Shown: positions 14,674 to 37,639 of the stretch, piece by piece
Position numbering within the stretch: position 1 is the stretch's first letter
Layout: every line of letters begins with the position of its first letter
Source of the DNA: Octopus bimaculoides
Taxonomy: Eukaryota
Assembly (NCBI RefSeq): GCF_001194135.2
Contig: NC_068995.1
Location: forward strand, 45,464,769-45,528,768
Direction: 5' to 3'
Length of the DNA: 64,000 nt
Notes under the pieces: generated by a model
Told to the model about the DNA's origin: nothing
Database searches by the model: none
What the model saw: only the letters and a program-made list of their open reading frames with translations
Translations under genes and position numbers: made by a program

Positions 14674-14761
14674 TTAACCCTTTTGTTACCAAATTTCTGT
14701 TGCAATACGCTGCCTGTTCCATTTAATTTTGAAAATAAGAGATAGTATCAAAAAAGGTTAA
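14674..14761. mobile_element. Short TTAA-flanked MITE, internally deleted copy
   Basis: TTAACCCTTTTGTTACC...ATCAAAAAAGGTTAA; same ends as 27979-28167 and 48726-48935. Confidence 0.55.
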
Positions 14762-16597: not shown

Positions 16598-17552
16598 GTG
16601 CCAAAGGTTAGTTACAAGCCAAATCCCATCACCAATGTCTCATGCACATCATCGATAATAGCCACCAGATGCCACCCAATGCTAACCAAAAAAAAGCCTA
16701 ACCACACCCATTAAACTGGTACCATCAAAATTTTAAACCTAAAGCTACTTTGTGAAAAAGTAATGGCTACAACAAGAACATTAAGCTTTAGAAGAAACAC
16801 TCCCTTACTTCACAATGTAACACAATAACACACATTTAGATTTTAAGAAATAAATTTGATTTACACATCTGTTACTAATTTTTTTATTTTATTTAAAAGA
16901 CATTTAAACTAAAAATTTAGATTCCAATAAAGTTAATAGATTTTCTAACTTTATAAAAAAAGATTTCAATAAAACAATGCTTTGTTTTTTCCTTACATTG
17001 GATAAATGAGAATTTGTAATTCTTGTTACCACTCTTATCTTAGTGCTTGGTTCTTCTAAAGGTGTTCAGATTGAACCCAGACTTCTCTCTCTCTCTCTCT
17101 CTGGCATATATTATACATTTTGCTAGCTTGCTAAATAAAAACTATACTAATTTATGCTGTGTAAAACCTAAATGGACCAACAATTAGACAAAGATGCAAT
17201 TATCAAATTAACCAAATAGCAAATTCCTTTTGATATAATGTATCAATAATCAAAGCTTTCCTACGAGAGGATGGGAAATCAAGTGGCAACCATTCTATAG
17301 AATTAATTCTTCGTGCACTGGATTTACTTTTAGTAAGAAGTAAAAAAGTTTTAGTGTCACTAAAAAAACAGGTTAGTACATGTGAGTAATGGAAGACGAA
17401 GGTACAGATAGCTAATACAATTTCTAATCAAGGCATTAGTGTCTCTTTTGTTTACAACCAACAGAATGCAATGCAATGAGGAATAGAAGAGAGGAAAGAG
17501 GAGAAACAAATATGAAGAAAAAGACCAAGTTTTTGCCTGGCACTCAACTAAC

Positions 17553-17722
17553 CTGCTCTGCAAGAGAAATTGTGCAGCATCAATTTGTTCTTGAGTTCCT
17601 GTGATAGTAATTATCCGATCACTGGAACCAGGAAGGGCTTCATCTATAACCACTTGGGCTCCAGACTGGCGCCGCACATCAGTAATGCGAGTTCCACATC
17701 TGCCAATAATGGCACCAGCAAG
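17553..17722 (-). CDS. HNRNPK: hnRNP K coding exon 13 (KH3): [56 protein letters not shown]
   Basis: 170 nt, tttag/gttagt; strong similarity to hnRNP K KH3. Confidence 0.96.
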
Positions 17723-17833
17723 CTAAATGGAGGGAGAAAGAAAAGGGACAAAATCCAAAATTACACATGATTCTTTTTAAGAGTAGTCTAGCAAAATTTT
17801 TAACTACAGCGAAACTAATGGAATGAAACTTAC

Positions 17834-17908
17834 CTCTTTGGGAATAGTCACTTGTGTGGTTGTAGTCTGTTCCATACCAAACATCATCCCTTGATTTCCC
17901 ATACCACC
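17834..17908 (-). CDS. HNRNPK: hnRNP K coding exon 12: GGMGNQGMMFGMEQTTTTQVTIPKE
   Basis: 75 nt, ttccag/gtaagt; TTQVTIPK is the start of KH3. Confidence 0.95.
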
Positions 17909-17997
17909 CTGGAAGAAAAAAAAAATAGGAAGGTAATAATAATATCTCAAAATATTTTATCTGAATCACCACAAAATTAATAGCTGAAGTAACTTAC

Positions 17998-18080
17998 CAT
18001 ACTGTCTTGGGCAAAGTTTTGCTGGCCACCATAGAAACCTTGGCCACTGTTTCCTCTTGCAGGATTGCCAAACCTGTTAT
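17998..18080 (-). CDS. HNRNPK: hnRNP K coding exon 11: (D)NRFGNPARGNSGQGFYGGQQNFAQDSM
   Basis: 83 nt, tttcag/gtaagt; phase consistent. Confidence 0.88.
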
Positions 18081-18192
18081 CTGAAAGGGGAAGGGGGGGA
18101 AAAAAAGGGAACATTTTAGGAAAATGTTGATGAAAGAGAAAGTAATAATGCTGAAAAAGAGTAGAGTTTGAGAGAGTCTACAATTGACCTAC

Positions 18193-18239
18193 CTCCTCCA
18201 CGCCCGGCACGAGCACCCATGCTGCCATTCATGGCATTC
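18193..18239 (-). CDS. HNRNPK: hnRNP K coding exon 10: (R)NAMNGSMGARAGRGG
   Basis: 47 nt, tttcag/gtaggt; phase consistent; RGG motif. Confidence 0.87.
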
Positions 18240-19113
18240 CTGAAATTATTGAAATATTTGGCCGATTAATATTTTTAAAGTACAGGTTTGAAATAAATGT
18301 GGAACTAGAAATGAAATAATAGCTACAACATGGAACATTATGAGATAATGAGAAACTAATAAAGTATTTACCATGCAGAGAGACAGAGAGAGAGAGAGAG
18401 AGAGAAAGAGAAAGATTTGATGAATTAGATTCAATAAAGAGATTTGCAGAAGACAGAAATATATTTAGTGAGTTAATGCCGTCTGACTCAACAGAATGAA
18501 GATGTTAGAACTGCTTGGTGCAGGAAAAAGATGTGACTACGTTTACCTTGAGGTGAGTGATATCATTAGAAGAGAGTATAATATTGATTTTAATTGTGAA
18601 ATAGGAATTATAATGAGGAAAGAAAACAATAAAACATTCTTCGAATAACATTTAAATCCTAATTAGGACCATCAGTGATACCTCTAGACAGAAATTTGGG
18701 GAGAGCTAAAAAGGGAAGCTAAGCCTATATGCTATTTTGTGCACGTTTGCCTAGGACAAATAACTCAATCCACAATTAGAACACTTAAGGCCACCATCAA
18801 CTCGTAAGTGCACAGCTTCAAGAGAAATTGGGCAAATACTGAATGAAAAGGCAAAAAAATCAACAAGCTTTCGAAATAAACTTAACCACTAAAAGTAATA
18901 AAATGTGATGAAAATTGGATTGTTGAATTTGTTTTGTTTTGTTTAAAATATCATTGATTAGTTTGCAAGTTTTTTTTGTTTGTAGATTGAACTTGGCTAC
19001 AGAATAATTTTGACAAACTTACAAATTGTTCAAGAGGAATAATCTAACGATGGTTGGGGCCCTCTCTAGAGGTATCTCTGCTGCACAGCACTAGTATGAT
19101 AGAGTGTTATTAC

Positions 19114-19290
19114 CTCATTCCTCCAAGTTCTTGCAGGCCATCATCTCTGCCCCCACTGCCACCGCCACCACTGCCATAGGGGAGAGCAGCACCCATGTTG
19201 TTTCTACCTCCAGTTAGGCTAGGTAGTCCACCCCTGCTCATGGAGCCAGACCCTCCCATGCCCATATCTCCCATTCCTCCAGCAGTACCT
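19114..19290 (-). CDS. HNRNPK: hnRNP K coding exon 9, Gly/Met-rich linker: GTAGGMGDMGMGGSGSMSRGGLPSL...GLQELGGM
   Basis: 177 nt, tttcag/gtaata; open and phase consistent. Confidence 0.88.
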
Positions 19291-20198
19291 CTGAAATTTT
19301 CACAATTCAGACTTATTTACAGCAGAATCCAAAAGTTTGGAGTTCAAATTTAAGCATTTCAAAGCATGAAATATAGAGAATGAAAATCATTGTTTATATA
19401 AAAATTGCCAAAAATCAGTGGCCACAAACTAGTTCACATCTACATATAAAAACTATATCATAAACTGATATTACCTTAATATTGATAAGAGTGAAACTTC
19501 ATTAATACTTAACTTACAATAAAGAGAAAACAAAACCTAAGAAAGAAAAAAAACTGGAGCCATTTTAATTTTTCAGAGAATCTAAGTCAATATTCTAAGA
19601 TATAGTATTACTGACACAAACATATGTTTATGTATCTTTAGGAGATTTTGCATTTCTCTAATATGCAAATATCTTATGAATGGTTAGGATAGAGCTAATG
19701 GAAATTAAATCTATGGATCAAAAGCAGTGGTTAAGGAATTATGTTTTGATCAAAGGCTCACTTTGCTAATAGCTTCGTTTATTAACACTACACTTCTTAA
19801 TTACACTAATGAAGTTACTCAGGTGTGATGAAGAACAAATGAATAAAAAAAAGGGAAATAAAAATGATACAATGAAGAAAATACTTCAAATACTTGATGA
19901 AGGGTTAAGAGATGAAATAATGAAATAAATTTTTAAAAATTAACATTTTTGTAGTTTATACATGAAATAAGGACAAGGGAATTATTTCCCTTAATTTTCA
20001 GGCAAGTCAACTAAATGGGTGACTTAATAAATATATGAATTAGGGAATATTTTATGAAGGTATGTTTTTCAAATGCAGCATTTAAATATGAAAAGTGATC
20101 AAAGATCTTAAGCTTCTACATACTACAGTACTTTAAAAACAATGCTATTTATGATAGTATCTTAATTATTAATATATAAACCTGGAAAGTTAACTTAC

Positions 20199-20377
20199 CG
20201 TCCTCTTATCTGTGGGCTCATCAATGGAGAGACACCTCCTCGTGGTGGTGGTGGCGGGGCACCCCTAGGTAGTTTACCACGGCCCCCCTCTGCAATGGTG
20301 TAACCACCATAGTCATGGGCGTAATACTCATCATAATTGTGTGGATCATATGGCTGGTTAACTCCTTTCGGTGGTGC
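20199..20377 (-). CDS. HNRNPK: hnRNP K coding exon 8: APPKGVNQPYDPHNYDEYYAHDYGGY...PPPPPRGGVSPLMSPQIRG(R)
   Basis: 179 nt, ctgtag/gtaagt; P.KG..QPYDP..YDE....YGG motif typical of hnRNP K. Confidence 0.95.
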
Positions 20378-20518
20378 CTACAGAAGATGGAGAGACCATT
20401 ATACACCAACTGTTGCCTGTTCCTCACACCATGTCATTTACTTTACAATGTATTTGAGAAGAGTTCTGAAACATTTACTATAATATATAATGAAAAACGT
20501 AAAAAAATATTGACTTAC

Positions 20519-20647
20519 CATTTCCAAAAGCTCATAAATAACATTAATGCAAGCTATGACCACAGGAGGTCGACCAGAAATTGCCACAACACGATCAGTG
20601 GACTGGGCACAGCAGGTTGAGTACACCTTGATGTTTGCTCCAGTTTT
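20519..20647 (-). CDS. HNRNPK: hnRNP K coding exon 7 (KH2, second half): KTGANIKVYSTCCAQSTDRVVAISGRPPVVIACINVIYELLEM
   Basis: 129 nt, tttcag/gtaagt. Confidence 0.96.
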
Positions 20648-20773
20648 CTGAAACAAATATTTGATATTTATAGAGATATGTAAGAAAAAAAAACTTCAAC
20701 ATTCAAATAGGGTTAAAATGCAAGAGAACAATATAGACACTAAAGAATGAGGAACACAAAGAAAGATACACAC

Positions 20774-20887
20774 CTCTCTCAACTCTTTGATCTTAAAACC
20801 AGCTCTACCAATAATGCAACCAGCCTGGCTCTGGTGAACCAATATTCTTATTTCACAGTCATATTCATCATTGGAGAACTGTTTGTA
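20774..20887 (-). CDS. HNRNPK: hnRNP K coding exon 6 (KH2, first half): YKQFSNDEYDCEIRILVHQSQAGCIIGRAGFKIKELRE
   Basis: 114 nt, ttgcag/gtgtgt; KH2 signature. Confidence 0.96.
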
Positions 20888-20992
20888 CTGCAACAGAGAT
20901 TGAGCCTTAGATTTTTATCTCAATAATAACACAGAAAAGTGAAGCTTCAATATAGACAATATTTTACAAAAGACTACATGAAATATACATAC

Positions 20993-21065
20993 ATCTTCAA
21001 GGGATGGTATAATGTCTGCCAAACAGTCCAATGCTGTATCTATGTCTGCACCAATTGTCAAAATT
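20993..21065 (-). CDS. HNRNPK: hnRNP K coding exon 5 (end of KH1): ILTIGADIDTALDCLADIIPSLED
   Basis: 73 nt, ttacag/gtatgt; resembles human [24 protein letters not shown]. Confidence 0.95.
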
Positions 21066-22626
21066 CTGTAAAATGTAAAAGGGATTTGAAATAATTATAG
21101 CTGTAGAAAACAATGTAACAGTCAAGATGTCTTTTATTTAAAAAAAAAATTAAAAAAATAAAAATACCAATTTACTAGACTGGTATGCAGATTAATAACT
21201 AAGTGCATAATCCATCTGAATGTTCAAATGGATAAAAATAAAATAAAATAAAATAAACTAACTGACTGTCGTACTAAATGTTCACGATATGCTGTGTAGA
21301 TGAATGAACTACAGTTACTTAGTTACTGAAATCTAGTTGTAACCTTTCAGCAGCTATATCATCTAGAGACCTTGGAATTTAGTCCTTACAAACATTGGAG
21401 TTTATTGTTTAACAAATTCATATTATGTAGATATATATATGTATATATAAACCAAACGGTATTTAAGACTCTGAGCTGTGTCACATTTCATATCAAGCTG
21501 TCTATTAAGTGGGAATGGTTAAGTGCAGAAGAAACCCAAAGCTTAGAATGTAATGAATTAAATTACTAGAATATTAGCTTTGATAAATTAGGTCTTTGAC
21601 AGTGATGATGTTTTCCTTTAAGTGACATGAAGCAAGTTCTAATAAATTAGTAAATCTCAAAAGGAAAATAAAATATTTATAAATATACATTAATACTTTT
21701 TTTTTTTTTAATTAAGAAATATAATTAAGCAAGGGGAATTTGGAGTATGAGAATTTAATATTAAAAAAAAAAACCATGAATAAGATGAAACTAAAAATAA
21801 ATAAAAAACCACTAAATACCCAAAGTAATTGTTAGGCTGTTTAAACCCATGCCCTTTCATTTTTAAGCAGAGATCTCCACTGATACAGAACTCAATGACT
21901 TAAGAATAAATATATACAACTATCTTTACAATTCACAGAGCACATACAACTTTTCAAGTGTCATCCACTAACTTGGAGGATAGTAATAATAGCTGCTGGT
22001 TTAACACTTCCATATTAAAAGAAAACTATATTAGAGTTATGATAGACATCTAAATTACAATATGAATTGTATAAAAAAAAAAAAAAGTCAAGTTGTTGAT
22101 CACTTAGTGAATTGCAGTAGAAAATAGAAACCCGTGATGAAAAAGCAAATAAACATTTTTTTTTTTTTTTAATATTTTATTTTTTGAAGCTGTAACAAGG
22201 AACTATTATGAGTATGAAGTACCCAATTTTAGATTTGGTCGTTGACTGGGAATCGTTGGGTGGGATGGACTGAATATTAATACATCTAGCAGGGAGTAAT
22301 GCAGATTCCAAGTTATTGAGCTCTGTATGTGGTTATTTCCCAAGATCCTAACTAGCTAGCTACATTTACTGGGTATAAGAGAGAATATGAGAGAGAGAGA
22401 GAGAGAAAAAGAAATTTAGAGGGTGACAGAAGAGTGGGAAAATAAATTTAAATAGAAGAAAAAAAATAAAGAACTAAAGAGTGAATGACATCAGATAAGT
22501 TTTGAAAGGGTGGGAAGAAAAAAATGTAAAAACAGTGTGGAGAAAAAAGAACTTACAATGGGCTTTTAACATTATGAAACAGTTATTAATAAAATGTGTA
22601 GTAGTACAATGCAGTAGGGTGCATAC

Positions 22627-22670
22627 CGTTCAGGGCCGGTGCAATCGGGCACTGTAACACTTGCTTTGAA
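22627..22670 (-). CDS. HNRNPK: hnRNP K coding exon 4 (KH1): FKASVTVPDCTGPE(R)
   Basis: 44 nt, atgcag/gtatgc; resembles human YNASVSVPDSSGPER. Confidence 0.95.
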
Positions 22671-24033
22671 CTGCATCATGGATGGACGGACGGACGGGCA
22701 GGGATGACGTTCCGTGGGTCAGGGATATTCAGGGTCAACAGACGGGCCATTGGTGGACATGGAAGGGCAAGAAGAATGGGGCAGGCAAGATATATATAAC
22801 AAAGTATTACTACCAGAAATCTTCACAATGGGCATAAAAAAGTAATATAAATGGAATCCATACATTCATTGAACAAGTCAACTTCAACGGGGCTGAAATT
22901 CTGTGGAATAAAAACTGGAGGCATTAGTTAAGACAAACTTGCAGTACTGAGAGATACTTGCAGGGAAAGTCTTGTTTTCCCCTATAACGTTCTGACTAGT
23001 TCTCTTTCTCCTCAATTCAGTTTTTCCCTTCTTAGAGACAGACAGGTTCCCGGGAATGGGTTATAAAAGAGAAAGGAAGCTGCTTTGTTCCTGAGAGAGA
23101 GAGAGAGAGTGAGAGAGAGAAAGAGAGAGGGAAAGTTACATTTCCCTCACACATATCTTCACAATATCAACTGCTGGCTGGTCAAATTCAGCTGCCACTG
23201 ATAAAAAGAACAACAGTGCAAAGCCTTACGTTTCAGATTGGGGGAACATCCCAGTCAACAAGCAGAATTTGAAAAAATTTCTTTTTATAAATAGTTTTTT
23301 TTTTTGTTCCATAGTAATAAAACATTCTTGCATGCATGGTTATGTTCAAAGAAATAATACCTAAAAGGAATAAAGAAGGAGAATTAGCTATAAGTTAAAT
23401 GCACCTCCATCTTTTGTGCAAGATTGGGGTTACTTCTCGACCCCTTTTCAACTCCTGCTTAACGTTTCAAGTTTTTATAATCACTATAGTCGGGTTCAGA
23501 TGCTACATTTATCGACATGCACTGGAAGTCCAGTTTGGGAAAATAGCTATCATCATCAAAAGTTCAGGAGTAAGATCATATNNNNNNNNNNNNNNNNNNN
23601 NNNNNNNNNNNNNNNNNNNNNNNNNNNNNNNNNNNNNNNNNNNNNNNNNNNNNNNNNNNNNNNNNNNNNNNNNNNNNNNNNNNNNNNNNNNNNNNNNNNN
23701 NNNNNNNNNNNNNNNNNNNNNNNNNNNNNNNNNNNNNNNNNNNNNNNNNNNNNNNNNNNNNNNNNNNNNNNNNNNNNNNNNNNNNNNNNNNNNNNNNNNN
23801 NNNNNNNNNNNNNNNNNNNNNNNNNNNNNNNNNNNNNNNNNNNNNNNNNNNNNNNNNNNNNNNNNNNNNNNNNNNNNNNNNNNNNNNNNNNNNNNNNNNN
23901 NNNNNNNNNNNNNNNNNNNNNNNNNNNNNNNNNNNNNNNNNNNNNNNNNNNNNNNNNNNNNNNNNNNNNNNNNNNGAAAATAGCATGTCATGTGGTGTGT
24001 TTTATATACTTATATGTGCACACGCACACACAC

Positions 24034-24080
<47 letters not shown>

Positions 24081-24500
24081 AAATAGTTGTTAGATACAAC
24101 TGTCAAATTTGATGGCCAATTTGGACAATGAAACAAACTAGTCAACCTTCACTACTTTCAAAGTTCATTTTCCGATGAAGGTGAAAATAAAGGATAATCA
24201 TCTCGTTACTTTCAAAGATGAAATATTTACAACAAAATGTGATATATAGTTAGATAGATATATATATATTTCTAATCTCTATTTTAAGACAAAGTTTAAA
24301 AATCACTTGGTACTAATATTTACTGACAAACAACACACCCACCCTCAAGAGAAGAATTAACGTCACCTTCTCATAAAATGGCAACTAGCATCTAGGCAGA
24401 AGCAATGCCTGATTTTGTCTTCATTATTACAAAAACATTAAAAATATAATAAATATGAGAAAAATGGTAACGGAAAAACTGTTTAATTAGAAATACTCAC

Positions 24501-24557
24501 ATGTTCTCTTAATCTTTTAATATTACTGCCACCCTTGCCAATGATAGCTCCAGCATT
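24501..24557 (-). CDS. HNRNPK: hnRNP K coding exon 3 (KH1 GxxG): NAGAIIGKGGSNIKRLREH
   Basis: 57 nt, tttcag/gtgagt. Confidence 0.96.
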
Positions 24558-25022
24558 CTGAAAGACATTTCAAATACAAACTTCGTTATTATTCAACAAG
24601 TGTGAGTGAGAGGGAGTGTGTGTGTGTGTGTGTGTGTGTGTGTTTAGTTAAATTAAAAATCTACTGATATTAATGCAAGCCTACATTTAGGAAAAGAAAA
24701 AATCAAGTTCATTTCCTGCAAAGAAAACTATTCTTAACCTATTCACTTATATCATTTACACTATCACACATTTTAGAAAGATATTTTGAAGCAGCAATTA
24801 TGAGTATTGCTGAAAAGCACAAGAGTAAAAAGAAGTTAAAAGCTAATGCAATAAGTGGTATGGACATATGAAGAAAGGAGACCAATTGCTCAAAATTAGA
24901 AGGGCAAATGTTGCATTTTTTGTCCTATTGGATGTTTTCTGCATTTTAATTGAAGAGAAACTAAAGCAATAATAATAAGACCCAAAATTGAATTTTTTTA
25001 AAAGGTTATTTTGGAAACCTAC

Positions 25023-25126
25023 TTTGCTCTGAAGTAAAATTCTTAACTCAATTTTTGGCCCACTGCCACGAGCTCTCTTCATCGATGAGTCATCATCTTC
25101 TTGTTCTAGTGGCCGCTTCATTATGC
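25023..25126 (-). CDS. HNRNPK: hnRNP K coding exon 2: (G)IMKRPLEQEDDDSSMKRARGSGPKIELRILLQSK (bipartite NLS, start of KH1)
   Basis: 104 nt, caacag/gtaggt; KRP...KR.R NLS and ELRILLQSK as in human hnRNP K. Confidence 0.95.
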
Positions 25127-26546
25127 CTGTTGAAAAATCAATTAAAATGAAAAACAAAAACCCATTAGTCTCATTTGTAATACACAGAAACATATATATA
25201 AAAAGCAACTCCCTAACAAATATTTGGGGGATTTAATTTACAGAAATATTTTTTTCACAAGCCATCCACGTAAGAAAAATTTTACAAACAAATTACTAGA
25301 GTAAATCTTTAGGAAAATGTATATGGAAAAAAAAATGCCTACAATAGCCCCAGCAATCAATCAAAAGGTAAAAAGAGTGCCTTAAAGATTAATAAAGGGT
25401 GGCAACAGGTAAATCAGCCAAGTAGGAAGGTACCTGCTCCTTTTGCGTGAAGATAGAGAAAACTGATAAAATGGCTGCTAAACTCAGCATTCAACACCAA
25501 CTGAACAGACAGCAAACTCAGGAAATAAGACTCAAATGAAAATTCTTTTCATGTAGAACACCAATATCAAATAGGATTCTGGAGAGAGAGAGAGTGTTTT
25601 ACCAAAGCCTTTAACAAAGAGATGAAGATTCAGACTCAACACTTGACACATGAAAAGATAGTATTTTTTTTTCCATCTTTTATCTTTTACTTTGATTCAG
25701 TTATTGGACTGTGGTCATGCTAAAGCACCAGAGTGAAAGGTTTGGTGAAACAAATCAACCCCAGGACTATTTTTAAGTCTCGTGATTATTCCATTGGTCT
25801 CTTTTGCCAAACTGCTAAAAGTAAAGTAACTGCTATGCCTAAAACTAAACTCAGAGATGTATCTAATCTCTTTTGTAACACCTAATCAATGCCAGAGTCG
25901 GCATATGTGTGCACATGCAATTGAACACCAGCTCCTCACACCTAGCAACCACATAATCCAACAGTGTATATCTTTAGCACTAAGATGAAAGCTGGTAAAA
26001 CTAGGAAACCCACACACTGAAGAAATAGAACTAAACTGAAAGTAGACTGGAAAGGAATAACAGGATGATTAAAAAAAAAAAAAGAACAAAAATACCAGAT
26101 TCACAAATAAAAACTCTTGTAAATTTGGGCAAGGAGAAAAAAATAATATAAAACCTAAAAAGACAAAATAACCAGAACCCCATTAACCAACACTAATTTG
26201 CTGGACGAGGAGCAAGAAAATAACAAAACCATTACTACCAGTCCTACTAAAGAGTAACTTAGAATTTATAAATGCCAAAATTTAATAAGAGTCACCCACC
26301 TCTTCAGTGAAATATAATTACTTCAATTTCAGTTAAAATGAAGCATTAAGTGGACTTGTAATATACAACACAGAAATAGCCAGAGGGAAAATAAAATTGT
26401 AGATGTTAAAAGCTGATAAACACAAAGTAAAGAAGAAAAAAATTAAAAAAGATATCACAAAAATAAAATTCATCTGAAAGAAAATACATACCCCAAGGTG
26501 ACCTATTGACCAAAAAGTGATCAGTTAAAACATCATTAGTTTTCAC

Positions 26547-26602
<56 letters not shown>

Positions 26603-27390
26603 CGTGTGTTCAAGTAGGAGTTAAACAAGACTGATGTACTCCCATCATCATCTCTTTTGTTGTATGTAAAGTAAGACAGAGAGGGATGAAAACTGGTTGC
26701 CTGTAGACTTGTTAGACAACATTTCAGGTCTAAAGAGCAGCATGATAGTGATGTAGCCAATGGGACAACTGATGAGGAATGAACCAGCCTGACTAGTAGC
26801 ACTACTTAAATGGTTCTTTACACCCCAATACACCAGTTTTTTGTTGATATTTAGTGGCCTAGCAACAACCAATGAGCACCTGCTCACATCCTCCTAGCTG
26901 TGGAGGAGTAGGCGATACTATCCTGCAAAAGCTTTGTTCAAAAACCAGCCTGTAGGACAGGCTGGTTGGGGAGGATAATTAATAATCTAAATCACAAATG
27001 CTAAAGCAACCATGACATGGGATCATTAGAAAGGGAAGGGATGGAAGCGAATCAACAAGTTAAGCCATAGAAATTCACCAAACACTAATTGATGGCGCAG
27101 CCTGATTTAATTCATTGGTATATTTGAAATTATAATAGCTTATAAATCTAGACATGTACATGTCTCACACTTATAAATAATGGAACATTTTAACAGACAA
27201 AAAAAAATTTTTTTTAATAAAAATGAAACTATAAACATCTACATAAATTATTGACGGCTTTTAAGTATTAAGAGATAGTTTTATAAAATTTGAATATAAA
27301 ATACAAATTTTCTATGATGATATTAATGCTTTCTTATGAAAAATGCTAGTTTAAGTGTACTAAAGAATAATAAAGCAGACTGCTTCTCAC

Positions 27391-27410
27391 CTGGGTCAGC
27401 CATGGTGCCA
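27391..27410 (-). CDS. HNRNPK: Candidate alternative 20-nt microexon with its own ATG (27403-27401): MADP(G)
   Basis: Long pyrimidine tract then ccatag|TGGCACCATGGCTGACCCAG|gtgaga; strong Kozak context; phase 1 matches exon 2. Confidence 0.65.
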
Positions 27411-27757
27411 CTATGGAAGGGGGAGAAATACAGAAGACAATATGTAAAAGGAAAGAAATCAATAAGGAACATGTACTTTATGACACCTGTTGCTGCTGCT
27501 GCTAGTGATACAGACTAGCTACCATGGCAACACTTAGCAACCAATTAAATGGTTTAAACTGGACATTTTGAATATTGTAAAATATTTGCACCAACAATAT
27601 ACAATATAGCTACACCACCCACAATAAATAAAAATTAACATTAAAAAAAGTGTAACCCCACCTACAATTAGAAGGGAAAACCTTAAAGAAATTAACAGGT
27701 GAGGGAGATAGAAAAGAAGGAAGAAAAAAAGGCATGAAAAACTATAACTGAACTCAC

Positions 27758-27773
27758 CTTCTTTCGAGTCCAT
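27758..27773 (-). CDS. HNRNPK: hnRNP K coding exon 1: MDSKE(G); the exon extends 5' as UTR to about 27817 or 27829
   Basis: ACGATGG Kozak context, donor gtgagt, phase 1 fits exon 2; acceptor ttccacag at 27819-27818. Confidence 0.8.
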
Positions 27774-27978
27774 CGTTAATTGATGACCAAAAGTTTCAAT
27801 GAAATCTCTAAGGAGTGCTGTGGAAGCAACTGTTATTGTTGAAAAGAAATTATTTCTTCACTTAACACTTTACCACACCTACAACGAAAGGAAACAAAAC
27901 AATAATGGTGTGTTTAAAGTTAGGAAAAATGGACTAAGATGAAGGAAATGAAAACATTCCCAACACTACTATAGGTAC

Positions 27979-28167
27979 TTTATCCCTTTGTTACCAAATT
28001 CATTTGCTTCAATTAATTTTGAAGATAATGAAGAATTTAGTGGAATAACTGTCTTTACTACACCTGGTGTTTGGAATGTAAATTAGCATGGTGTTTTGAT
28101 GGGAGGTTTTAATAAAGATCACTTATAGTACTGGAAGTCTTGGGCAGGTTAATATCAAAAGGGTTAA
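27979..28167. mobile_element. TTAA-type MITE (piggyBac-like ends)
   Basis: Ends TTATCCCTTTGTTACC...ATCAAAAGGGTTAA; internal similarity to 48726-48935. Confidence 0.6.
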
Positions 28168-28259
28168 ACTGAACTTTCAAAATTACTTTTACTGCTGAGG
28201 AATTAGAATTTTACACAGGATCATATCAATTAATATCCAAAATCTGACGTTTGTTAATA

Positions 28260-28313
<54 letters not shown>

Positions 28314-29379
28314 TAGATAGATAGATAGATATATAGATAGATAGATAGAGATGCACAGGCACAAATTGATATAAGAAGAAAATCTGGACCAACGAAATTA
28401 CTTGTTGCATCAATAGACAAAAATAGGCAGGAATCTTTAATATAGCCACAATACAAAAAAAATCAGACAACAAAAGCAAACAAACTGTTAATGAAAATTA
28501 TGAATTATAAAGCTTAAATAAGGGAGAGAGAAAAAATCTAGCTGTGAACAGTACTTCAAAGAGATATTTAAAGTTTTATTTTGATGACTATACACAAAAA
28601 AGTCATTACTATATTAGCTCAAAATTATATTGTATACAATTATAGTTTACTTTCACTTGTATCCTCATCCTGGAATCTAGCATCACCAGAATGCAGCCAG
28701 AAAAAAAGACAATATCAACCTTATATGGTAGCAACCCTTTAAAGAGAAAAGAAAATATATCTCACCAAGTACAAAATTCACTAACCAGCAATTTAGCTCA
28801 GTAAATTACAATGGATTAACTATAATTTAGAGGGTTAGATGGAGTTGCTTATGTTAAGGTATTATAGTAAAACAACTTTAATACAGGATTTGGAAATCTA
28901 AGAGAATAGTGTACCGTTTTCATTCCTGCATGCTTCAGCTTACGTTTCAAAATATTATATTCAACAATATATTTATATTCAAGCAAGAATATGAAGGCAA
29001 TACTGTTCACGTCTAACAGGGTGCCATAAATTAATCAAAAATATTTCTACATAACTTTAAATCTATGAAATAGAAAACAAACAGTCATCTCTAGAAGTGA
29101 ACGCTAAAAAGGTACGGGATGAGGTGGACGGTGCAAGTTTCAGGAAAGAAAAAAAACGATATATCAGAAATGTTACATCCAAAAGCTGGCCTAAAATATC
29201 TTACAGCACGACAAACTGAAATAAGTATTTATTTTTACAACCAAGATATTTACATCTTTAACACCAACACATCTTAAGAATTAAATTGTATTTAAATTAA
29301 TCTCATGAAATAAAAGTTTTCAGTTGATCAACGCCAGATGTTTTATTAAAAATTCTTTCGGTGAGCGTTCTTTCGGTTT

Positions 29380-29700
29380 ATCTTTTGTTTCAGTACCGTG
29401 GCCACGCTGGGGCACCGCCTTTAAGAACTTTTAGTAGAATGCATCGACCTCAGTATTTAGTTTAAGCCTGGTACTTATTCTATCGATCTATTTCGCCGAA
29501 CGGCTAAGTTACAGGGAAGTAAACACAAAGCTATACACACACATACATACGACAGGCTTCTTTCAGTTTCCGCCTACCAAATCCACTCAAGGCTCTGGTC
29601 GGTCCGAAACTATAGTGGAAGACACCTGCCCAAGATGCCACGCTGTAGGACTGAATTCAGAACCATGTGGTTGAGAAGCAAACTTCTTACTACACAGTTA
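29380..29700 (-). mobile_element. Octopus SINE (intronic)
   Basis: Reverse-orientation tail (tgtttcag...gctggggcaccgcc) and head (gaaccatgtggttgagaagcaaacttcttactacacag). Confidence 0.8.
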
Positions 29701-29989
29701 CCTAAAAGTGAAAAAATATCCTACGCAATCGGGACTGAAATTCTGGGACCAAAAAATTTTCAGAATCATATTCTCCATATTTTTAAACACAGACTACCTC
29801 ACATATCGAAGTCTGCCTTTAAAAACAGGAATCCGAAGAAATTATAAATAAAAAATAAACATGGACACGGGGTTCATGGTGACAAGATACTTTTTCCTAG
29901 GTAGGATGGGGTAAGAGAATATCAGTCAACAAAACCCTGCTCCATTCTAGCAGACCCTAGATAACATTAGATAATCCTTTAGCTTTTGA

Positions 29990-30170
<181 letters not shown>

Positions 30171-31110
30171 CGTAGTTAATGAAGTCGAGTTCCAAAGCTG
30201 TGACCACGTTATCAATAGTGAAATCAATAGAAACTGTTGCATCAGTAATGAAATACTTGCCAAAATCTCATAGCCTTTTTTTTTCTTCTCTGACTCGTAA
30301 ACTAATAATTACCATCCATGGACACGATAAATATTTTTTAAAAGTGAACGACGAATGCTACAAGCAATAAAGTCTGCTTTGTTTACCAAGGTCCGAGTTC
30401 GAACATAGAAGGGGATCGCTCCCATTCCGGGGTTAATCATAAACCACCTTTTAACCCCGATCCATAGCTTATTCCTGTTATTTATGACCCAGTGTACCAA
30501 TTGAGGGAACCCCTTGCCAACATTGTTTCCTATTAATTAAGCCCCAAGTGGGCAGAGTTGAGTAAGAATTGAAACTTAAATGGAGGGCTTAGCAGGCAAG
30601 AAATTGAACAGCAAAGCCCACGTTGCTCGCTACCCTTTCAATAATCACATGAAGCTACACCATCGTGCAACTTCGCCCCAAACGCAATATTTAAATCCGT
30701 CCACACGGATTTTTTAAAGAATAAATATAGGATTCATGATTATATAATCTAATAGCTCAATGTTGAAGTATAACCGACACAAGAAATTAAAAACTTCTTG
30801 TTAAAGCCATAATATATAACAGCAAAAAATAGAAAGACAACCAAATAAAATAATATAATCCATATTCACACAGAATGGAAAAAGACGAGTGTTGTTGAGA
30901 GTGGGTGAGTGCTAGGAGCCCAAAACACAAAAAACCACACCCAATGCACTGTCTGCACAAGGCAGACAATTTAATACACACACACAGAGGATTGGATGCA
31001 TGAGAAAGAAGCAGTATTTTCTTCCCTTGTTCTGCATAAAAGGCCGATATTTTTGATGACAAAGAAATAGGAAGCTGTGACCTTCATGCATTTTCATAAG
31101 CATTACTCAC

Positions 31111-31209
31111 ACGAGAAATAAAACCAAAAGATTACAAAACTCTTGTCTATTTCACCACTTCCACCACGGTGACGAGGTGTAATATAATCAATCAACAGAA
31201 TTAACAAAC
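31111..31209 (-). other. Candidate non-coding 5' UTR exon of hnRNP K
   Basis: Acceptor tttaccctcctgttttag and donor gtgagt; no transcript evidence. Confidence 0.4.
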
Positions 31210-31999
31210 CTAAAACAGGAGGGTAAACGCTAAAATTTACTTCGTCTGCCGTTTTTTCTTTACTTCTAAATTTTACCAATTCCTCAATTTAGAGAAATGC
31301 ACGTTCTTCACACACACACACACACTCTCTCTCTCATGAGCAACGCTGGTTAAACTCAAAAACTCAAACGTTAGTAATGAAATCGAGGCGCGCTATCAAG
31401 AGAAGGTTTACCTTTAGTCCTAGCTTATATGCTTCCTTATATTCAATATCAGAAATTTTGATAGTATCGCTGTCAATAATATATTCAAAATATAACACCG
31501 CCACGGTTTACTAATTCAGTTTGATATAATAAAATAAAAAAAATACAAAGTCAGTGAACTTAGATTCGTTGCCTTTATAATTTCAGCGACCTTTTTTTTT
31601 AAAAAAAAAAGAACATTAATTGTATTACACTTTTAAACCTCCTCACGAACGACACGCCCTTCGAGGTATATAGTTAATAATACTACAATAATAATAGTGG
31701 AGTAGCCGGTTCGTTTGCGTCATTTTATTACACTAGAACACAATACTTAAAAAAAAATAAAAAATAAAAAAAAAAATCAACCTTCGCTGTAACACCTGAC
31801 TTCAACAAGCTGGAGGTAGACTGCTTGGCGCCAGTAATTTTTTTCTTCTTTACACGTAGCTAATGAGTTCGTGATGAAGCAGTTTTCAATTTTGGGAAAC
31901 AAGTCGCTACTGACCTTCACCTTTTATGGCATTAAAATTTGTTTTGATTATTTGATAAATTTCTAGAACCTTTTTCATTGTTCGGTTCTTTGTGCTGCG

Positions 32000-32900
32000 T
32001 TTACTCCGCAACATATCTTTTTAAGAACCAGCCTAAGGTACTGACTGCATGCGGACCGCTAAAAGTGAAATAGGCCCAAAACCAGACGAGAGCCGAGTAG
32101 ACCACTCCACTGAGTCTATAATAATAAGTACAGATAAGTGAAATCTAGCGTTCTCCTATGATTTACTGATATTTAAATCTACTTCGGATGTGGGACACGG
32201 ACGCAGAAACACGAGCATTAACATCCAGTCAGAGGGAGATTGTATGTGTGTCTGTATATATACATATAGACAAGCGTGCAAACGGAGAAAGAGCTAAATA
32301 GGCGAAAAACACTAATATATAATCTATTATTAGCTGAGATTGTGGGTGGTAGGAATGGTTCAGCGGCCAGTAGTTTTTGCAGCAACGAACACTAGGCCAG
32401 AGAATCACTTCTGTAGCAATCTCAAGTAATAAACTGCATCTTTTAAATATATATCCACACACACACATAGTAAAGAAACCGTGAAATGTAAACTAAATTT
32501 TACATTTGCCGCACTCGCTTCACTTTGTTTTATAATTCACGTTAGAAAAGCATGAAGCCCTCAACATCTTGTTGCCTACTTCCAACAGTTGAAAAGCTTT
32601 ATCGAGCGCCGACAAAGACGCAACAGGAAAGTGAAGCGGTTAAAGGTCGGCGTGGTAGGGACGGCGGAAGGGGGTGGCTTTTATTATATAAAGATTAGAA
32701 AAATCCCTACTGTTAGCAGAGAGAAACACGAAGAAATATGGGAGGGAAGTATGGCCGCCATGTGACAGCAAGGCAGAGATAGAGAAAAGTGGTGGTAGGA
32801 GGAGAGAGTGCAGATAGAGAACAGAGGTGGGAGAAAGGAGAGAGAGAGGGGGAGAGAGAGAGAAAGTTTGTGTAGAGATAGAGAGGGGGGGGGCGGAAGA
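32000..32900 (-). promoter_or_regulatory. Probable hnRNP K promoter / first-exon region
   Basis: Locally CpG-rich; YY1-like ATGGCGGC on the minus strand (32761-32754); GA/CT tract at 32790-32890; lies about 5 kb upstream of the first coding exon. Confidence 0.5.
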
Positions 32901-35900
32901 ATACGTGTACATATCAACAAGAAGTTTATACACGAGTACAAAACGTGAAAGCATCTGGATAACAATTAAGATTTATTAATTGAAAATTCAACCAGGGGCC
33001 GCCAAAACATAAGGCAAACATTAAACAGACAGGAAAAAAATCAAAAGATTAATTATTAGCTTTGATGTTCGGCCAAATTTCACCATGTGTGTAGCACCAT
33101 TTTAATGAAGGTTTATAATATATGCTCACACACACACATACATACATATATGTTTTTTTTCTTTTCTTTTCCTATAACGAAACCAGATTTACTAGGAAAA
33201 AAATATACACAAGGAAGCTTATGACATCGAAACTCCGTACTAAATAACTCCACTTACATAATTATCAGCTAAATATATTTCTTACGGATAGCGAGGAGGG
33301 AAGGCAAAAAAGAATAATTAAATACTGCACCTTCAGGTCTGCTATTCAATGAACACAGTATATATATATACATATAAAGACTATCGCGACAGTTCAGTCT
33401 ATATAACTTCCTAGTTCGGATTCATTGAAGTAAAAATTCACTGGTAACATTGCCCAAACACCATCTGGCATCAGAAATAATGTTTGTGAGAGAAAAAAAA
33501 AGATCAGTCTTAATAAGCAGGGTCCCGAGCTAACGAAGGACTACTGCCTTGTGGTCGCTGGACGTTACAAGAAATAGCAGCGAAATCCTCGCATCATACC
33601 TTCTCGTATAGATATGTGAAACACTAGTTCCTGTTACACAAAAACAGTGGAACGTTTACGTTTGGAATGCCTTTGGTCAATAAGGCTGTTCGATAAGCGC
33701 TGACCAGTGAAGTCCAGGCGAATCAACAGACTTGCCTGATTTACATTACAATAGCTTCAGTTCTCTTAGCAAGATCGAACTTGCTCTGCAGTAAAGGCCG
33801 ATGGTGTTACACCACTTAATAACGAAAAACAGTGGGAAAGATATCTGAAAGACATGTGACCATCGCTTATCTGATCGGGATGAAAAACGAGACAACAGTG
33901 GCTTTTATACTTGACCAATAAATACACAGTTTACAGATTTTACACATACACACAGTGCATGGGTTAGTTGTAATAATAAAAAAAAACCCGTATCAATTCA
34001 CGATTGCTTTTATTAACTGTAAATACGATGGGTAGAATGGGGTCTCTCGGGTAACGGTCCTTTCTAATCAAAACTAGTGTTATATATCACAAATCGAACA
34101 AGCCTCTAAGTAGTCGTTGGATTCGCTAGAAACAGCTGCAAAATATCCTTCCGATGATTTCCTATTATCTTTAATAATAATAAAGCATTGACAGAGGGGA
34201 TAATGCAGTCGAGAAAAGACGACGACCATGGCCAGAGATCATCTCGATCAGAGCTGACCTATGGCTATTCCATTAAACACATTTGTGCGCTTCTATATTT
34301 AGCGTTGATGGATAAATGAATAGCCAGTCTTATATGAGAGGAGCAATTTGAAATGCGAACAGGAAAGCTTCCAATAGGATATGGACTGGTGCACTACCTA
34401 CCAATGGGGCCGCAAACCCGGTATAGCAGGACCATTGATAAAAACAGAAAAACTAATCTAGATAACTTACAACTGGCCCATTTATATTGACCATTTAAAA
34501 CTAGCGTCTTATTTATCACTCAACGAAGAAACCGTTCATTTCAATTAATAAACAGAAAAGCACAACTACAGTTTTCTGAAAATTATAGTTTATATTTAAA
34601 GAAACTTTGCAAGGAAAGACTTCCTCCTGTCCCCCCACCTATTTTCTACCAGAGAAAAAAATTTTAAAAGGAGTGTTTTGGGGTGTGTGGGGTACAAAAG
34701 GAATTCTTGCTCGCAAGTCTTTTAATGACATTTTGTGGAAATGTGCTTAAGTGAGTGGAGATTACACAATGAGGTTTCAAACAAACCTTAGGAAAATACT
34801 CAAACTAGGGGACTGGCGGTTGTACGAAGCCTGCTTTGAGTAAGATCGATTCCTCCGAAACTCAAAAACAAATTTCAAAATTCTATCACAATACTTGTAA
34901 TTTACTTCTATGAAAATATATCTGCCAAATTACATTTTAAAAATATGCCATTTTTTTTTTTTTAGAAAGTTATGAAGAAACGAGGCCGGTGGGGCACCAA
35001 TTTGTAATTATGACACACACACATATACATACACGTATATATACACACATACGTATATGCGTGTGCGCACACGCGAATACACAAATATCCTACAAGTTGG
35101 CCGATGGTTCCGAATACAAAAATAAAAAGTAAATACAAGAGACTTTTGTGATTGAAAAATCAAGGAACGATGGCGATAGTGAGAGGCGGTTTACCGATCG
35201 TAGTAATACATGTATAGCAGGAAGACAAATTGGAACAGCCAACCTCCTCTCCCGATACACTAACCACCACTACTACTACTACCACCACCACCACCACGCA
35301 CTCAATGGGACTTATTCCTCTCGCCGCCTAACACACACATCGAAGTGAAGCTATCGGTTCCTCCCCATAAAATCTCTTCAATTAAATTACCAGCGACCAA
35401 AACTATAGCATTACTATGTGATCAAACTGAGGAACTACAAGCCTGACTTAGCAACAAAAACAAATATATATATACACACACGCATACAAATATATATATA
35501 TATATGGTGAAAGCTACAGACTATATTCTGTTGCGTAATAACACATGGTGCAACGGCAAGTAACGCGAGATTGAGGAAGAGAAAAGGACGATTCCCTGAT
35601 CAGTGACAACCGCAATCGGTTTCAGACTAATATTTATATTTTCATTAAAAAGAAAAATTTAGTAAAAACGTAAAGCAACGATATAAATAAATGCAATAAA
35701 AGAAAAGGTGACATAGTAAACGAATGATTCGGGCAGGGTTCTTCAGTGAAGGTTTTTCAAATAAAAAAGATTTTCTTCCAATGATCGGGGGATTTCGGAC
35801 GGAGATAAATGTCGTACGATTACTTCAATGAAGGGTTGATAATGATTTAAAGCATTTAAAAAAATAAAAAAGACAGGATTAAGGGTTTTTTATTTTTTTT

Positions 35901-36039
35901 AGTTTCTATATATCAGATGAGACAATTTTAACCATCGCCTTTCCAGTAGTCACATTTTCATGGAGGAAAACCATTTAACTCATTCTTTTAGCTCTAATAC
36001 ACTTAGGCGCAACCAATATCCTTATACACACACACACAC

Positions 36040-36085
<46 letters not shown>

Positions 36086-36252
36086 AGGGCCTATGCTGGG
36101 TGTGGGTGATTACGTGAAACTACAGAGTGAAATTAATGCGACAGAAACCTAACTGGCCATGTGCTGGTGGGAACTATCAGCGTGTAATATGTGTTAATGA
36201 TATATATATATGGCGATGGTAAAGGATCGCATATATATAAATGTATATATAA

Positions 36253-36311
<59 letters not shown>

Positions 36312-36710
36312 GCACTTCAAATAATTTCCCGAGCGTATATAGTGAAATTGATATAATACACGGAAAACATGGATCAATGGCCAATGCCGTGCGGTTTGCA
36401 GCACAAGACAGAACTAGGCACACATTAATACATATATTAACGATATTCCTTTCTTGCCCGTCAACATACATGTAGGTTCATTTGCAATGTGAATGAAGGG
36501 AAATTAAAAGGAAAATAATAATAAGAAGAAGAAGAAAGAAAACCAACGAGGGGAAAACAAAAGTATAGAGATATTTAACACATTATGCAATGGCGATATT
36601 CAGGAAATATTGCAATCATCGGCACCAACATCAATAATACACAGAATGAGAATTATATATATACATTTATTTATATGGTACTATTTAGTTTGGGCGTACC
36701 ACTACATGGG

Positions 36711-36749
<39 letters not shown>

Positions 36750-36859
36750 GCACATAGGCAGACTTTCTTATAAGATCGGGCAAACCGTGAAATGCACGAG
36801 AACACTTCAAAAGCGGGCGGCGTTTTAGAAAGAAATATAACAGTAAATACAATTGTTGG

Positions 36860-37127
36860 GTTTATATATACACACAAATACATATATATATATATATATA
36901 CATACACACACACACATATATATACACACACACACATATACACACACATATATATACATACACACATACAAATACACATATATATATACATACACACATA
37001 CAAATACACATATATATATACATACACACATACAAATACACATATATACACACATATACATATATATATACATACACACATATACACACACATATACATA
37101 TATATATACATACACACATATACAAAT

Positions 37128-37168
<41 letters not shown>

Positions 37169-37235
37169 CAAATACACATATATATACATACAAACATATA
37201 CAAATACACACACACACACATATATATATATATAT
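36860..37235. repeat. Compound (CA/TA/CATA)n microsatellite with a recurring TACAAATACACATA unit
   Basis: Direct inspection. Confidence 0.95.
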
Positions 37236-37639
37236 GAGGGTACAACAAAAATGCGTTTCAAGAAAGAGTTTTTTCCTGCAAGTCCCTGGGTTTTTTTTTA
37301 CTCCTGAATGTGTGTGTGTATGTGAAATGCATGTATACAAATGTAGAATTAGATCTTTCTCGCTATACATTCATCTTTACACATGATTGTTAAGAAATAA
37401 TACAATATATGCAAAGCCATATATATACATAATCTGTTTAATATGTATTATGTATGCTTTAAATTATACATTATGTTCAACATATATAATGGGTTTTACA
37501 TATGTATATATAAAGCCTCGTTACCTTTCTAAAAAGGAATCAATTTTCCACTGATGAACGGGGAAAACAGAAATGAGATGAGACAGAAAAAGAAGCTGGC
37601 GCCTTAATTTTTCTACAATGCTCAGAATGAAGAATGGAT

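What the first reader, a model, noticed from the sequence alone, without database searches (positions are those of the whole stretch)
27391..27470. 20-nt ATG-bearing microexon: N-terminal switch or translational poison for hnRNP K
Seen: a roughly 55-nt pyrimidine-rich tract, then ag|TGGCACCATGGCTGACCCAG|gtgaga, between coding exons 1 and 2. Its own ATG (ACCATGG) is in frame with exon 2 and gives MADPG-IMKRP.... If it is included after exon 1, the upstream ATG reads MDSKEVAPWLTQA-stop (TAA at the start of exon 2), an overlapping uORF. Inference: one tiny exon selects between MDSKEG- and MADPG- N-termini next to the NLS, or reduces output through the uORF/NMD.
Basis: partly seen in the sequence, partly recalled or inferred. 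Interest (0 to 1): 0.75.

Follow-up and report, generated by a model that had tools for sequence, protein, structure and literature searches.

The report
Alternative start exon in octopus hnRNP K
A 20-base segment in the first coding intron of the octopus hnRNP K gene looks like a real, evolutionarily kept alternative start-codon exon that swaps the first five amino acids, but no available transcript shows it being used and it is an ordinary kind of gene feature.

Summary
On the minus strand, an 81%-pyrimidine tract is followed by ag|TGGCACCATGGCTGACCCAG|gtgaga (27410..27391). This lies between the ATG exon (27878..27758) and exon 2 (25126..25023) of hnRNP K. The window is Octopus bimaculoides.

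The signals exceed chance. This is the only AG..GT pair in 64 kb reaching both splice scores (about 0.17 expected). Only 1.4% of similar pairs carry an in-frame ATG with a good start context.

The 20-mer is identical in O. sinensis and O. vulgaris. In Argonauta the ATG, frame and donor are kept, but the acceptor AG is lost. Sepia has no counterpart.

A public O. bimaculoides protein model (UniProt A0A0L8FVP4) already starts MADPGIMKRP.

No accessible transcript or RefSeq/ENA isoform contains the 20 bases. Two transcript contigs skip them.

Best reading: an alternative ATG-bearing 5' exon, more likely a first exon than a cassette. The uORF/NMD "poison" idea is untested. This is ordinary biology and modestly interesting.

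The parts
38626..38897 (-). Non-coding first exon (E0) of hnRNP K. The region just upstream (38800-39600) has CpG observed/expected of 0.9-2.9, consistent with the main promoter.
   Evidence: Transcript contig L012 (99.6-100% identical to the window) maps 1-272 here. CpG profile.
27758..27878 (-). It is 5'UTR plus ATG 27773 (context TTAACGATGG) and codes MDSKE-G. Donor is AAG|gtgagt.
27421..27655 (-). Conserved non-coding block A, ending about 10 nt before the acceptor. It contains AATTGGTTGCTAAG (27546-27533, inverted CCAAT-like), GTTGCCATGGTAGC (27531-27518, X-box-like palindrome) and CAGGTGTCATAAAGTACA (27489-27472, E-box).
   Evidence: Alignable to Sepia pharaonis (E 1.5e-10) and to Argonauta (65% over 318 nt, E 1e-24). 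Four-species alignment. About 99% identical to O. sinensis, against about 92% for the whole aligned region. CpG observed/expected is 0.0.
27456..27464 (-). TATTGATTT, invariant in all four cephalopods. It is branch-point-like (UUGAU), 48 nt before the acceptor AG.
   Evidence: Reading it as a branch point is inference.
27411..27470 (-). Pyrimidine tract (81% Y, includes CTCCCCCTTCC) plus acceptor AG (27412-27411). There is a 63-nt AG-free stretch upstream.
   Evidence: The AG is replaced by AT in Argonauta.
27391..27410 (-). The 20-nt segment TGGCACCATGGCTGACCCAG. ATG is at 27403-27401. It codes M-A-D-P-G(1st base) and ends in phase 1 like E1.
   Evidence: Identical in O. sinensis (L014 10360) and O. 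vulgaris (L016 3360). Argonauta has TGACAACATGGATGATCCAA, 15 of 20 positions, with ATG and frame kept. It is the start of UniProt A0A0L8FVP4.
27385..27390 (-). Donor gtgaga (CAG|GTGAGA, 11.9 bits).
   Evidence: GTGAGA is invariant in Argonauta, where it scores 7.9 bits because of A at -1.
26730..27022 (-). Conserved non-coding block B. It contains a near-invariant 37-mer, CATTGGTTGTTGCTAGGCCACTAAATATCAACAAAAA (26874-26838).
   Evidence: Sepia E 2.7e-21. Four-species alignment.
25127..25138 (-). 12-nt upstream extension of exon 2 (ATTTTTCAACAG). It is used through a TG acceptor (25140-25139) and adds DFST.
   Evidence: L012 joins 27758 to 25138. RefSeq X1/X2 carry MDSKEDFSTG. It is the only copy of the 12-mer in the window.
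25023..25126 (-). Exon 2. It carries the NLS-like KRP...KRAR. The frame-0 stop TAA (25123-25121) overlaps the in-frame ATG (25121-25119) as TAATG.

Best explanation
The 20 bases are the 3' end of a genuine but minor alternative ATG-bearing 5' exon ('exon 1b') of octopod hnRNP K.

The parts under selection are the start codon in a strong initiation context (CACCATGG) and the strong 5' splice site (CAG|GTGAGA). This site joins to exon 2 in the same phase as the canonical exon. The product is hnRNP K beginning MADPG- instead of MDSKEG-, immediately before the N-terminal KRP...KRAR nuclear-localisation motif.

I think it is most likely entered by transcription starting in or just after conserved block A, which would make it an alternative first exon, rather than by splicing from exon 1. 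On that reading it changes mainly the promoter and 5'UTR, and only trivially the protein.

Shown: the sequence signals, their rarity, their conservation, and the existence of a public model using this ATG.

Inferred: that it is transcribed and spliced at all, where transcription starts, and any functional difference.
For: - Donor and acceptor scores are unique in the 64-kb window.
- The in-frame open ATG with R(-3)/G(+4) occurs in only 1.4% of comparable AG..GT pairs.
- The 20-mer and about 300 nt upstream are about 99% identical between O. bimaculoides and O. sinensis, against about 92% for the whole aligned region. The 20-mer is also exact in O. vulgaris.
- In Argonauta hians all 9 critical positions (ATG plus GTGAGA) and the 20-nt spacing are kept in a region of 65% identity. 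Chance for this is about 0.65^9 = 0.02. The acceptor AG is not kept. This pattern fits a first exon better than a cassette.
- An in-frame ATG with a good context is only useful if it is the first AUG, which also favours a first exon.
- Block A directly upstream carries CCAAT-like, X-box-like and E-box motifs conserved as far as Sepia.
- UniProt A0A0L8FVP4 (O. bimaculoides) starts MADPGIMKRP.
Against: - No transcript evidence. L001 and L012 skip the segment.
- None of the RefSeq isoforms on record (O. bimaculoides old X1-X5 and new X1-X2, the latter sequences also carrying O. sinensis accessions), the three O. vulgaris ENA isoforms, or the single Argonauta model starts MADPG.
- No gene with the MADPG product is on record on any contig.
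- The 2015 model may be purely ab initio. If so, it is triggered by the same sequence signals and is not independent evidence.
- Block A is CpG-depleted (observed/expected 0.0), whereas the E0 promoter is CpG-rich. I found no convincing TATA or Inr conserved between Octopus and Argonauta.
- The strong acceptor 20 nt upstream of the donor would be a 2-3% coincidence under the first-exon reading.
- Sepia has block A but no ATG or donor counterpart.
Confidence: 0.42

Rival explanations
1. Cassette microexon. The 20 nt are spliced in between E1 and exon 2. Ribosomes starting at the strong upstream ATG (27773) then read a 13-codon uORF (MDSKEVAPWLTQA) that ends at a TAA overlapping the exon-2 ATG (TAATG). 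Full-length output falls through NMD or translational repression, or shifts to MADPG- (leaky scanning) or MKRP- (reinitiation). hnRNP K binding to the C-rich tract (CTCCCCCTTCC) might provide feedback.
For: - The acceptor is strong (10.6 bits, better than 7 of 12 real exons). A site that strong within 60 nt upstream of a given donor is expected about 2.4% of the time (26 such acceptors per 64 kb strand).
- There is an 81% pyrimidine tract and a 63-nt AG-free zone.
- The branch-point-like TATTGATTT plus pyrimidine run is invariant in four cephalopods.
- Argonauta has another AG 33 nt further upstream. It would give a 53-nt exon of the same length class (2 mod 3).
- The frames are verified.
Against: - The acceptor AG is AT in Argonauta, and the substitute acceptor is weak (3.0 bits).
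- Conservation of an in-frame, good-context ATG is hard to explain downstream of a strong AUG.
- Two transcript contigs and all annotated isoforms skip the segment.
- There is no UGC motif and the exon is not frame-preserving, so it is not the usual regulated neural microexon type.
- There is no data on NMD or hnRNP K binding.
Confidence: 0.2
2. Unused pseudo-exon. A pyrimidine-rich end of a conserved intronic regulatory block happens to be followed by AG, an ATG and a GT. The MADPG protein model is an ab initio artefact.
For: - There is no transcript support in anything accessible.
- RNA-seq-based RefSeq annotation of two species lacks it.
- There is no counterpart in Sepia.
- The conservation in Octopus species may simply reflect block A.
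- The features were noticed post hoc.
Against: - The joint rarity of the signals: about 0.17 expected pairs per window, times 0.014 for the ATG context.
- An out-of-sample test: ATG plus GTGAGA plus spacing are intact in Argonauta at 65% background identity.
Confidence: 0.33

Closest known systems
Alternative first coding exons / alternative promoters giving short alternative N-termini (a general feature of metazoan genes)
   Same: Two upstream exons each carry their own ATG. Both end in the same phase and join a common exon 2. A conserved non-coding block lies directly upstream of the second one.
   Different: No transcription start has been shown. The upstream block is CpG-poor. The exon is preceded by a strong 3' splice site, which a first exon does not need.
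Microexons (27 nt or shorter; the neural SRRM4/eMIC-dependent class; from my own knowledge: Irimia 2014, Torres-Mendez 2019)
   Same: The length is 20 nt. Both splice sites are strong. The upstream intron is highly conserved.
   Different: It is not a multiple of 3. There is no UGC near the acceptor. The acceptor is not conserved in Argonauta. No inclusion evidence exists.
Autoregulatory 'poison' cassette exons coupled to NMD in SR and hnRNP genes (from my own knowledge: Lareau 2007, Ni 2007; the term is used for other RBPs in PMC11829967)
   Same: It lies in an RNA-binding-protein gene. Inclusion would end the upstream reading frame early. It sits next to deeply conserved intronic sequence.
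   Different: The stop falls 13 codons into the ORF, so it acts as a uORF rather than truncating the protein. The exon itself is not conserved beyond octopods. No poison exon of hnRNP K surfaced among the titles and abstracts listed; those papers were not opened.
Overlapping stop-start (UAAUG) termination-reinitiation after short uORFs
   Same: In the cassette configuration, the uORF stop TAA (25123-25121) overlaps the conserved exon-2 ATG (25121-25119).
   Different: The overlap follows trivially from the Met-Lys codons ATGAAG. It is untested.
TG 3' splice sites in U2-type introns (Szafranski et al. 2007, PMC2374985)
   Same: The same intron's alternative acceptor, 12 nt upstream of exon 2, ends in TG. 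It is used in transcript L012 and in RefSeq X1/X2.
   Different: This concerns exon 2, not the 20-nt segment. It matters because exon 1b could join either acceptor (MADPG- or MADPDFSTG-).

Membership tests
hnRNP K orthologue (host gene) | Three KH domains, an N-terminal KRP...KR(A/S)R motif, and the ELRILLQSKNAGAIIGKGG KH1 start | tested here: met
   tblastn with human hnRNP K written from memory. The N-terminal 221-aa model is 100% identical over 98% of its length to a protein named hnRNP K-like; the complete spliced CDS is confirmed by L012, 95-100% identical to the window across 38897..12458, encoding the 435-aa hnRNP K isoform P0140. Pfam KH_1 on record.
Alternative first coding exon | Own ATG, open to a functional donor, in the same phase as the canonical first coding exon | tested here: met
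   Kept in Argonauta.
Alternative first coding exon | A promoter or transcription start immediately upstream | tested here: inconclusive
   The conserved block has CCAAT-like, X-box-like and E-box motifs. However, CpG observed/expected is 0.0 and no conserved TATA or Inr was found. No CAGE or 5'RACE data were available.
Alternative first coding exon | Transcripts that begin in this exon | not testable with these tools
   Only two octopus mRNA contigs were reachable (L001, L012). Both start at E0.
Cassette microexon | Length of 27 nt or less, with functional 3' and 5' splice sites | tested here: met
   20 nt; 10.6 and 11.9 bits. This is in silico only.
Cassette microexon | Both splice sites conserved in related lineages | tested here: not met
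   The AG is AT in Argonauta. Neither site is present in Sepia. Both are kept within the genus Octopus.
Cassette microexon | Junction-supported inclusion between flanking exons | tested here: inconclusive
   Two transcripts and all annotated isoforms skip it. No read-level data were available.
Neural SRRM4-type microexon | Frame-preserving length and a UGC motif close to the acceptor | tested here: not met
   20 nt is not a multiple of 3. There is no TGC in the 60 nt upstream.
Poison exon (AS-NMD) | Inclusion places a stop far upstream of the last exon junction | tested here: met
   The TAA at 25123-25121 lies in the frame of the upstream ATG. This is in silico and applies only if the upstream ATG is used.
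Poison exon (AS-NMD) | Included isoform stabilised when NMD is blocked; autoregulation by the encoded protein | not testable with these tools
   No expression data were available.

The most novel reading that the evidence does not exclude
The segment is a true 20-nt cassette microexon that works as a translational switch in octopod hnRNP K. hnRNP K binds the C-rich tract (CTCCCCCTTCC) in front of it and controls its inclusion. Inclusion converts the canonical start into a 13-codon uORF whose stop overlaps the exon-2 AUG (UAAUG). Output is then throttled or diverted to MADPG- or MKRP- forms. The deeply conserved blocks A and B would be the splicing-control module, shared with cuttlefish.
Probability: 0.1. 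Interest if true: 0.55.

Novelty: new member of a known kind. Interest (0 to 1): 0.27.

Why it matters
If used, the exon gives octopod hnRNP K a second entry point: a different promoter and/or 5' leader, and a 5-residue N-terminal swap next to the NLS. hnRNP K is an abundant RNA-binding regulator, so this would be a handle on tissue-specific or feedback control of it.

The protein change itself is probably trivial. Argonauta would give MDDPS-, so even the Met-Ala versus Met-Asp difference is not conserved.

The practical value is for annotation. It explains why one public O. bimaculoides model starts MADPG while RefSeq models start MDSKE. It also points to two deeply conserved cephalopod non-coding elements in this intron that deserve a functional test.

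Tried and rejected
- Exact look-up of the MADPG version of the 372-aa isoform: not in the collection. A gene with the MADPG 430-aa product (P0248) is on no contig on record.
- Short N-terminal homology search for MADPG fragments: none found. It returned only genomic ORFs of exon 2. These led to contigs of another octopod that stop at an (AT)n repeat 0.8 kb short of the segment.
- Library-wide HMMER search with the 49-aa ORF across the segment: one chance hit to an unrelated repeat protein.
- Exact 20-mer scan of metagenome contigs: three unrelated bacterial coding matches.
- Rfam on the whole window and, permissively, on 26600-27900: nothing. The conserved blocks are therefore not a known RNA family, and there is no mir-7.
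- Hypothesis that Sepia's annotated 33-nt mini-exon is the orthologue of the 20-nt segment: rejected. It follows block B, not block A.
- The O. bimaculoides 'paralogue' P0004 as a comparison: useless, because it is an intronless retrocopy.
- My initial assumption that the window is O. vulgaris: wrong. It is 100% identical to O. bimaculoides CM046615.1.
- Literature: no paper links hnRNP K of cephalopods to a microexon.

Full report
**What is there**

A pyrimidine-rich stretch at 27470..27413 is 81% C+T. Only 0.75% of equally long windows in this 64 kb reach that level. It is followed by ag|TGGCACCATGGCTGACCCAG|gtgaga, with the 20 nt at 27410..27391.

The host gene is an hnRNP K orthologue on the minus strand (tblastn; homology search).

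The window is Octopus bimaculoides. It is 100% identical to GCA_001194135.2 CM046615.1 over all non-N stretches compared. I first took it for O. vulgaris because the proteins are identical.

A transcript contig 95-100% identical to the window across its exons, 100% in the first three (L012), defines the 5' end of the gene:
- a non-coding exon at 38897..38626
- the ATG exon at 27878..27758 (ATG 27773)
- exon 2

- E1+E2 gives MDSKEGIMKRP...
- E1+20 nt+E2 gives MDSKEVAPWLTQA-stop. The TAA (25123-25121) overlaps the in-frame exon-2 ATG as TAATG.
- The segment's own ATG (27403-27401, GGCACCATGG) gives MADPGIMKRP...

**Is it more than chance?**

I scored sites with approximate metazoan splice-site weight matrices written from memory, against the window's base composition.
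- The acceptor scores 10.6 bits, beating 7 of the 12 real exons of this gene.
- The donor scores 11.9 bits, beating 11 of 12.
- On both strands of the whole window, this is the only AG..GT pair 3-60 nt apart that reaches both values.
- From the numbers of such acceptors (26 and 21) and donors (5 and 3), about 0.17 pairs are expected.

Among all 4,487 AG..GT pairs of 15-25 nt in the window, 10.9% hold an ATG that stays open to the donor in the required phase. Only 1.4% also have a purine at -3 and G at +4.

The configuration is therefore very unlikely to be a random pseudo-exon, even allowing generously for post-hoc selection.

**Comparative evidence**

The third homology search and its cluster opened genomic loci for four further species:
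- O. bimaculoides and O. sinensis (L013, L014)
- Argonauta hians (L015)
- O. vulgaris (L016)

Sepia pharaonis (L002) was already in hand.

Within Octopus, the 20-mer and its flanks are identical in O. sinensis and O. vulgaris. The 300 nt ending at the segment are about 99% identical between O. bimaculoides and O. sinensis, against about 92% for the whole aligned region.

In Argonauta the region aligns at 65% over 318 nt. The orthologous 20 nt read TGACAACATGGATGATCCAA|GTGAGA.
- The ATG, the purine(-3)/G(+4) context, the 20-nt spacing, the phase and all six donor bases are kept. It would code MDDPS-IMKRP.
- The acceptor AG has become AT.
- At 65% background identity, nine of nine critical ATG and donor positions surviving has a chance of about 0.02.
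- A weak alternative AG (3.0 bits) 33 nt further upstream would give a 53-nt exon.

In Sepia the upstream block is conserved, but there is no AG, ATG-in-frame or GT counterpart.

**Annotation and transcripts**

One cluster member, UniRef100_A0A0L8FVP4 (O. bimaculoides, 430 aa), begins MADPGIMKRPLEQ. A public gene model of this same genome therefore already uses this ATG and donor. I cannot tell whether that model rests on a transcript or on ab initio prediction.

Everything else on record starts differently:
- MDSKEG: O. vulgaris CAI9733951/2 and the old O. bimaculoides X2.
- MDSKEDFSTG: O. bimaculoides and O. sinensis X1/X2.
- MKRPLEQ: O. vulgaris CAI9733953.1 and the old O. bimaculoides X4.
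- MMDVKEG: Argonauta.

The two octopus mRNA contigs I could reach (L001, L012) go from 27758 straight to exon 2.

These searches for MADPG-bearing sequences found nothing relevant:
- exact look-ups
- a short N-terminal search
- a library-wide search with the ORF across the segment
- a 20-mer scan of metagenomes

The accessible transcript sample is very small. This is therefore weak negative evidence. RefSeq's RNA-seq-based models are a somewhat stronger negative for an abundant isoform.

**What it most likely is**

The conserved parts are the start codon and the 5' splice site, not the 3' splice site. An in-frame, well-placed AUG is only useful if it is the first AUG.

Directly upstream lies a 235-nt block (27655-27421) conserved as far as cuttlefish. 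It has an inverted CCAAT-like box, an X-box-like palindrome and an E-box.

I therefore favour an alternative first coding exon ('exon 1b') spliced to exon 2 in the same phase as E1 (confidence about 0.4).

Against this reading:
- Block A has no CpGs, whereas the E0 promoter is CpG-rich.
- I found no conserved core-promoter element.
- The strong acceptor, the invariant branch-point-like TATTGATTT (27464-27456), the pyrimidine run and the 63-nt AG-free zone all look like a real 3' splice site.

In that model the upstream AUG (also in good context, AACGATGG) would translate a 13-codon uORF. NMD, leaky scanning to MADPG-, or reinitiation at the overlapping TAATG are all possible outcomes. None is tested.

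The remaining probability (about 0.33) is that the segment is never used and the MADPG model is an artefact.

A functional N-terminal 'switch' is doubtful. From general knowledge, Met-Ala and Met-Asp N-termini are processed by different N-terminal acetyltransferases. However, Argonauta's version would be Met-Asp like the canonical one.

**Comparison with known systems, and novelty**

Alternative ATG-bearing 5' exons, microexons, poison exons in RNA-binding-protein genes and uORF switches are all well known. The segment passes the in-silico tests for the first of these. It fails the conservation and motif tests for a classic regulated microexon.

The ATG is already used in a public protein entry. 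I rate it a new member of a known kind, of modest interest.

**Side observations**

Two side observations may be of at least equal interest:
- A GT...TG intron is used by the major O. bimaculoides isoforms at this same exon 2.
- Two non-coding blocks in this intron are conserved across coleoid cephalopods.

Noticed in passing
window 25127-25140 (minus strand): The major annotated O. bimaculoides and O. sinensis isoforms (MDSKEDFSTG...) and transcript contig L012 splice 27758 to 25138. The intron then ends in TG (25140-25139), not AG. This is a non-canonical TG 3' splice site 12 nt upstream of the canonical AG. The same TG is present in O. sinensis, O. vulgaris and another octopod contig (L004).
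   Followed up: partly
window 27421-27655 (block A) and 26730-27022 (block B), minus strand: Two non-coding blocks in hnRNP K intron 1 are conserved between Octopus, Argonauta and Sepia (BLAST E 1.5e-10 and 2.7e-21 against Sepia). Block B holds a near-invariant 37-mer (26874-26838). There is no Rfam match and no coding signal. They are candidate enhancer, promoter or splicing-control elements.
   Followed up: partly
L002 21167-21199 (Sepia pharaonis): The Sepia model CAE1300053.1 includes a 33-nt mini-exon immediately after block B, entered from a donor upstream of the normal ATG. The octopod orthologous stretch (window about 26729-26693) keeps the acceptor but has TT instead of the GT donor.
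   Followed up: partly
L003 10001-11080 (O. bimaculoides CM046609.1): An intronless hnRNP K-like gene (P0004, 359 aa, about 73% identical, no third KH domain) appears to be a processed retrocopy. Related transcripts exist in Logan (P0003).
   Followed up: no
window 20888-20905 and 19113-19291 (minus strand): Further alternative splicing of the gene. An acceptor 18 nt upstream adds AQSLLQ. A 179-nt Gly/Met-rich exon is skipped in the 372-aa isoform.
   Followed up: no
window 12458-38897: No mir-7 was found in the window (gene span 38897..12458, plus flanks): no Rfam match, and no match to the mature miR-7 sequence with up to 3 mismatches. From memory, vertebrate HNRNPK and Drosophila bancal host mir-7. 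The window has N gaps (for example 23582-23975) that could hide something.
   Followed up: partly
window 27326-27472 (minus strand): An upstream ATG at 27472 is in frame with the MADPG ATG without a stop (MFLIDFFPFTYCLLYFSPFHSGTMADPG). A transcript starting upstream of 27472 would carry a 23-residue hydrophobic extension. This ATG is absent in Argonauta.
   Followed up: partly
tool behaviour: The homology search appears to return only proteins between about 1/1.75 and 1.75 times the query length. This hid the 430-441-aa isoforms, including the MADPG model, until a full-length query was used.
   Followed up: yes
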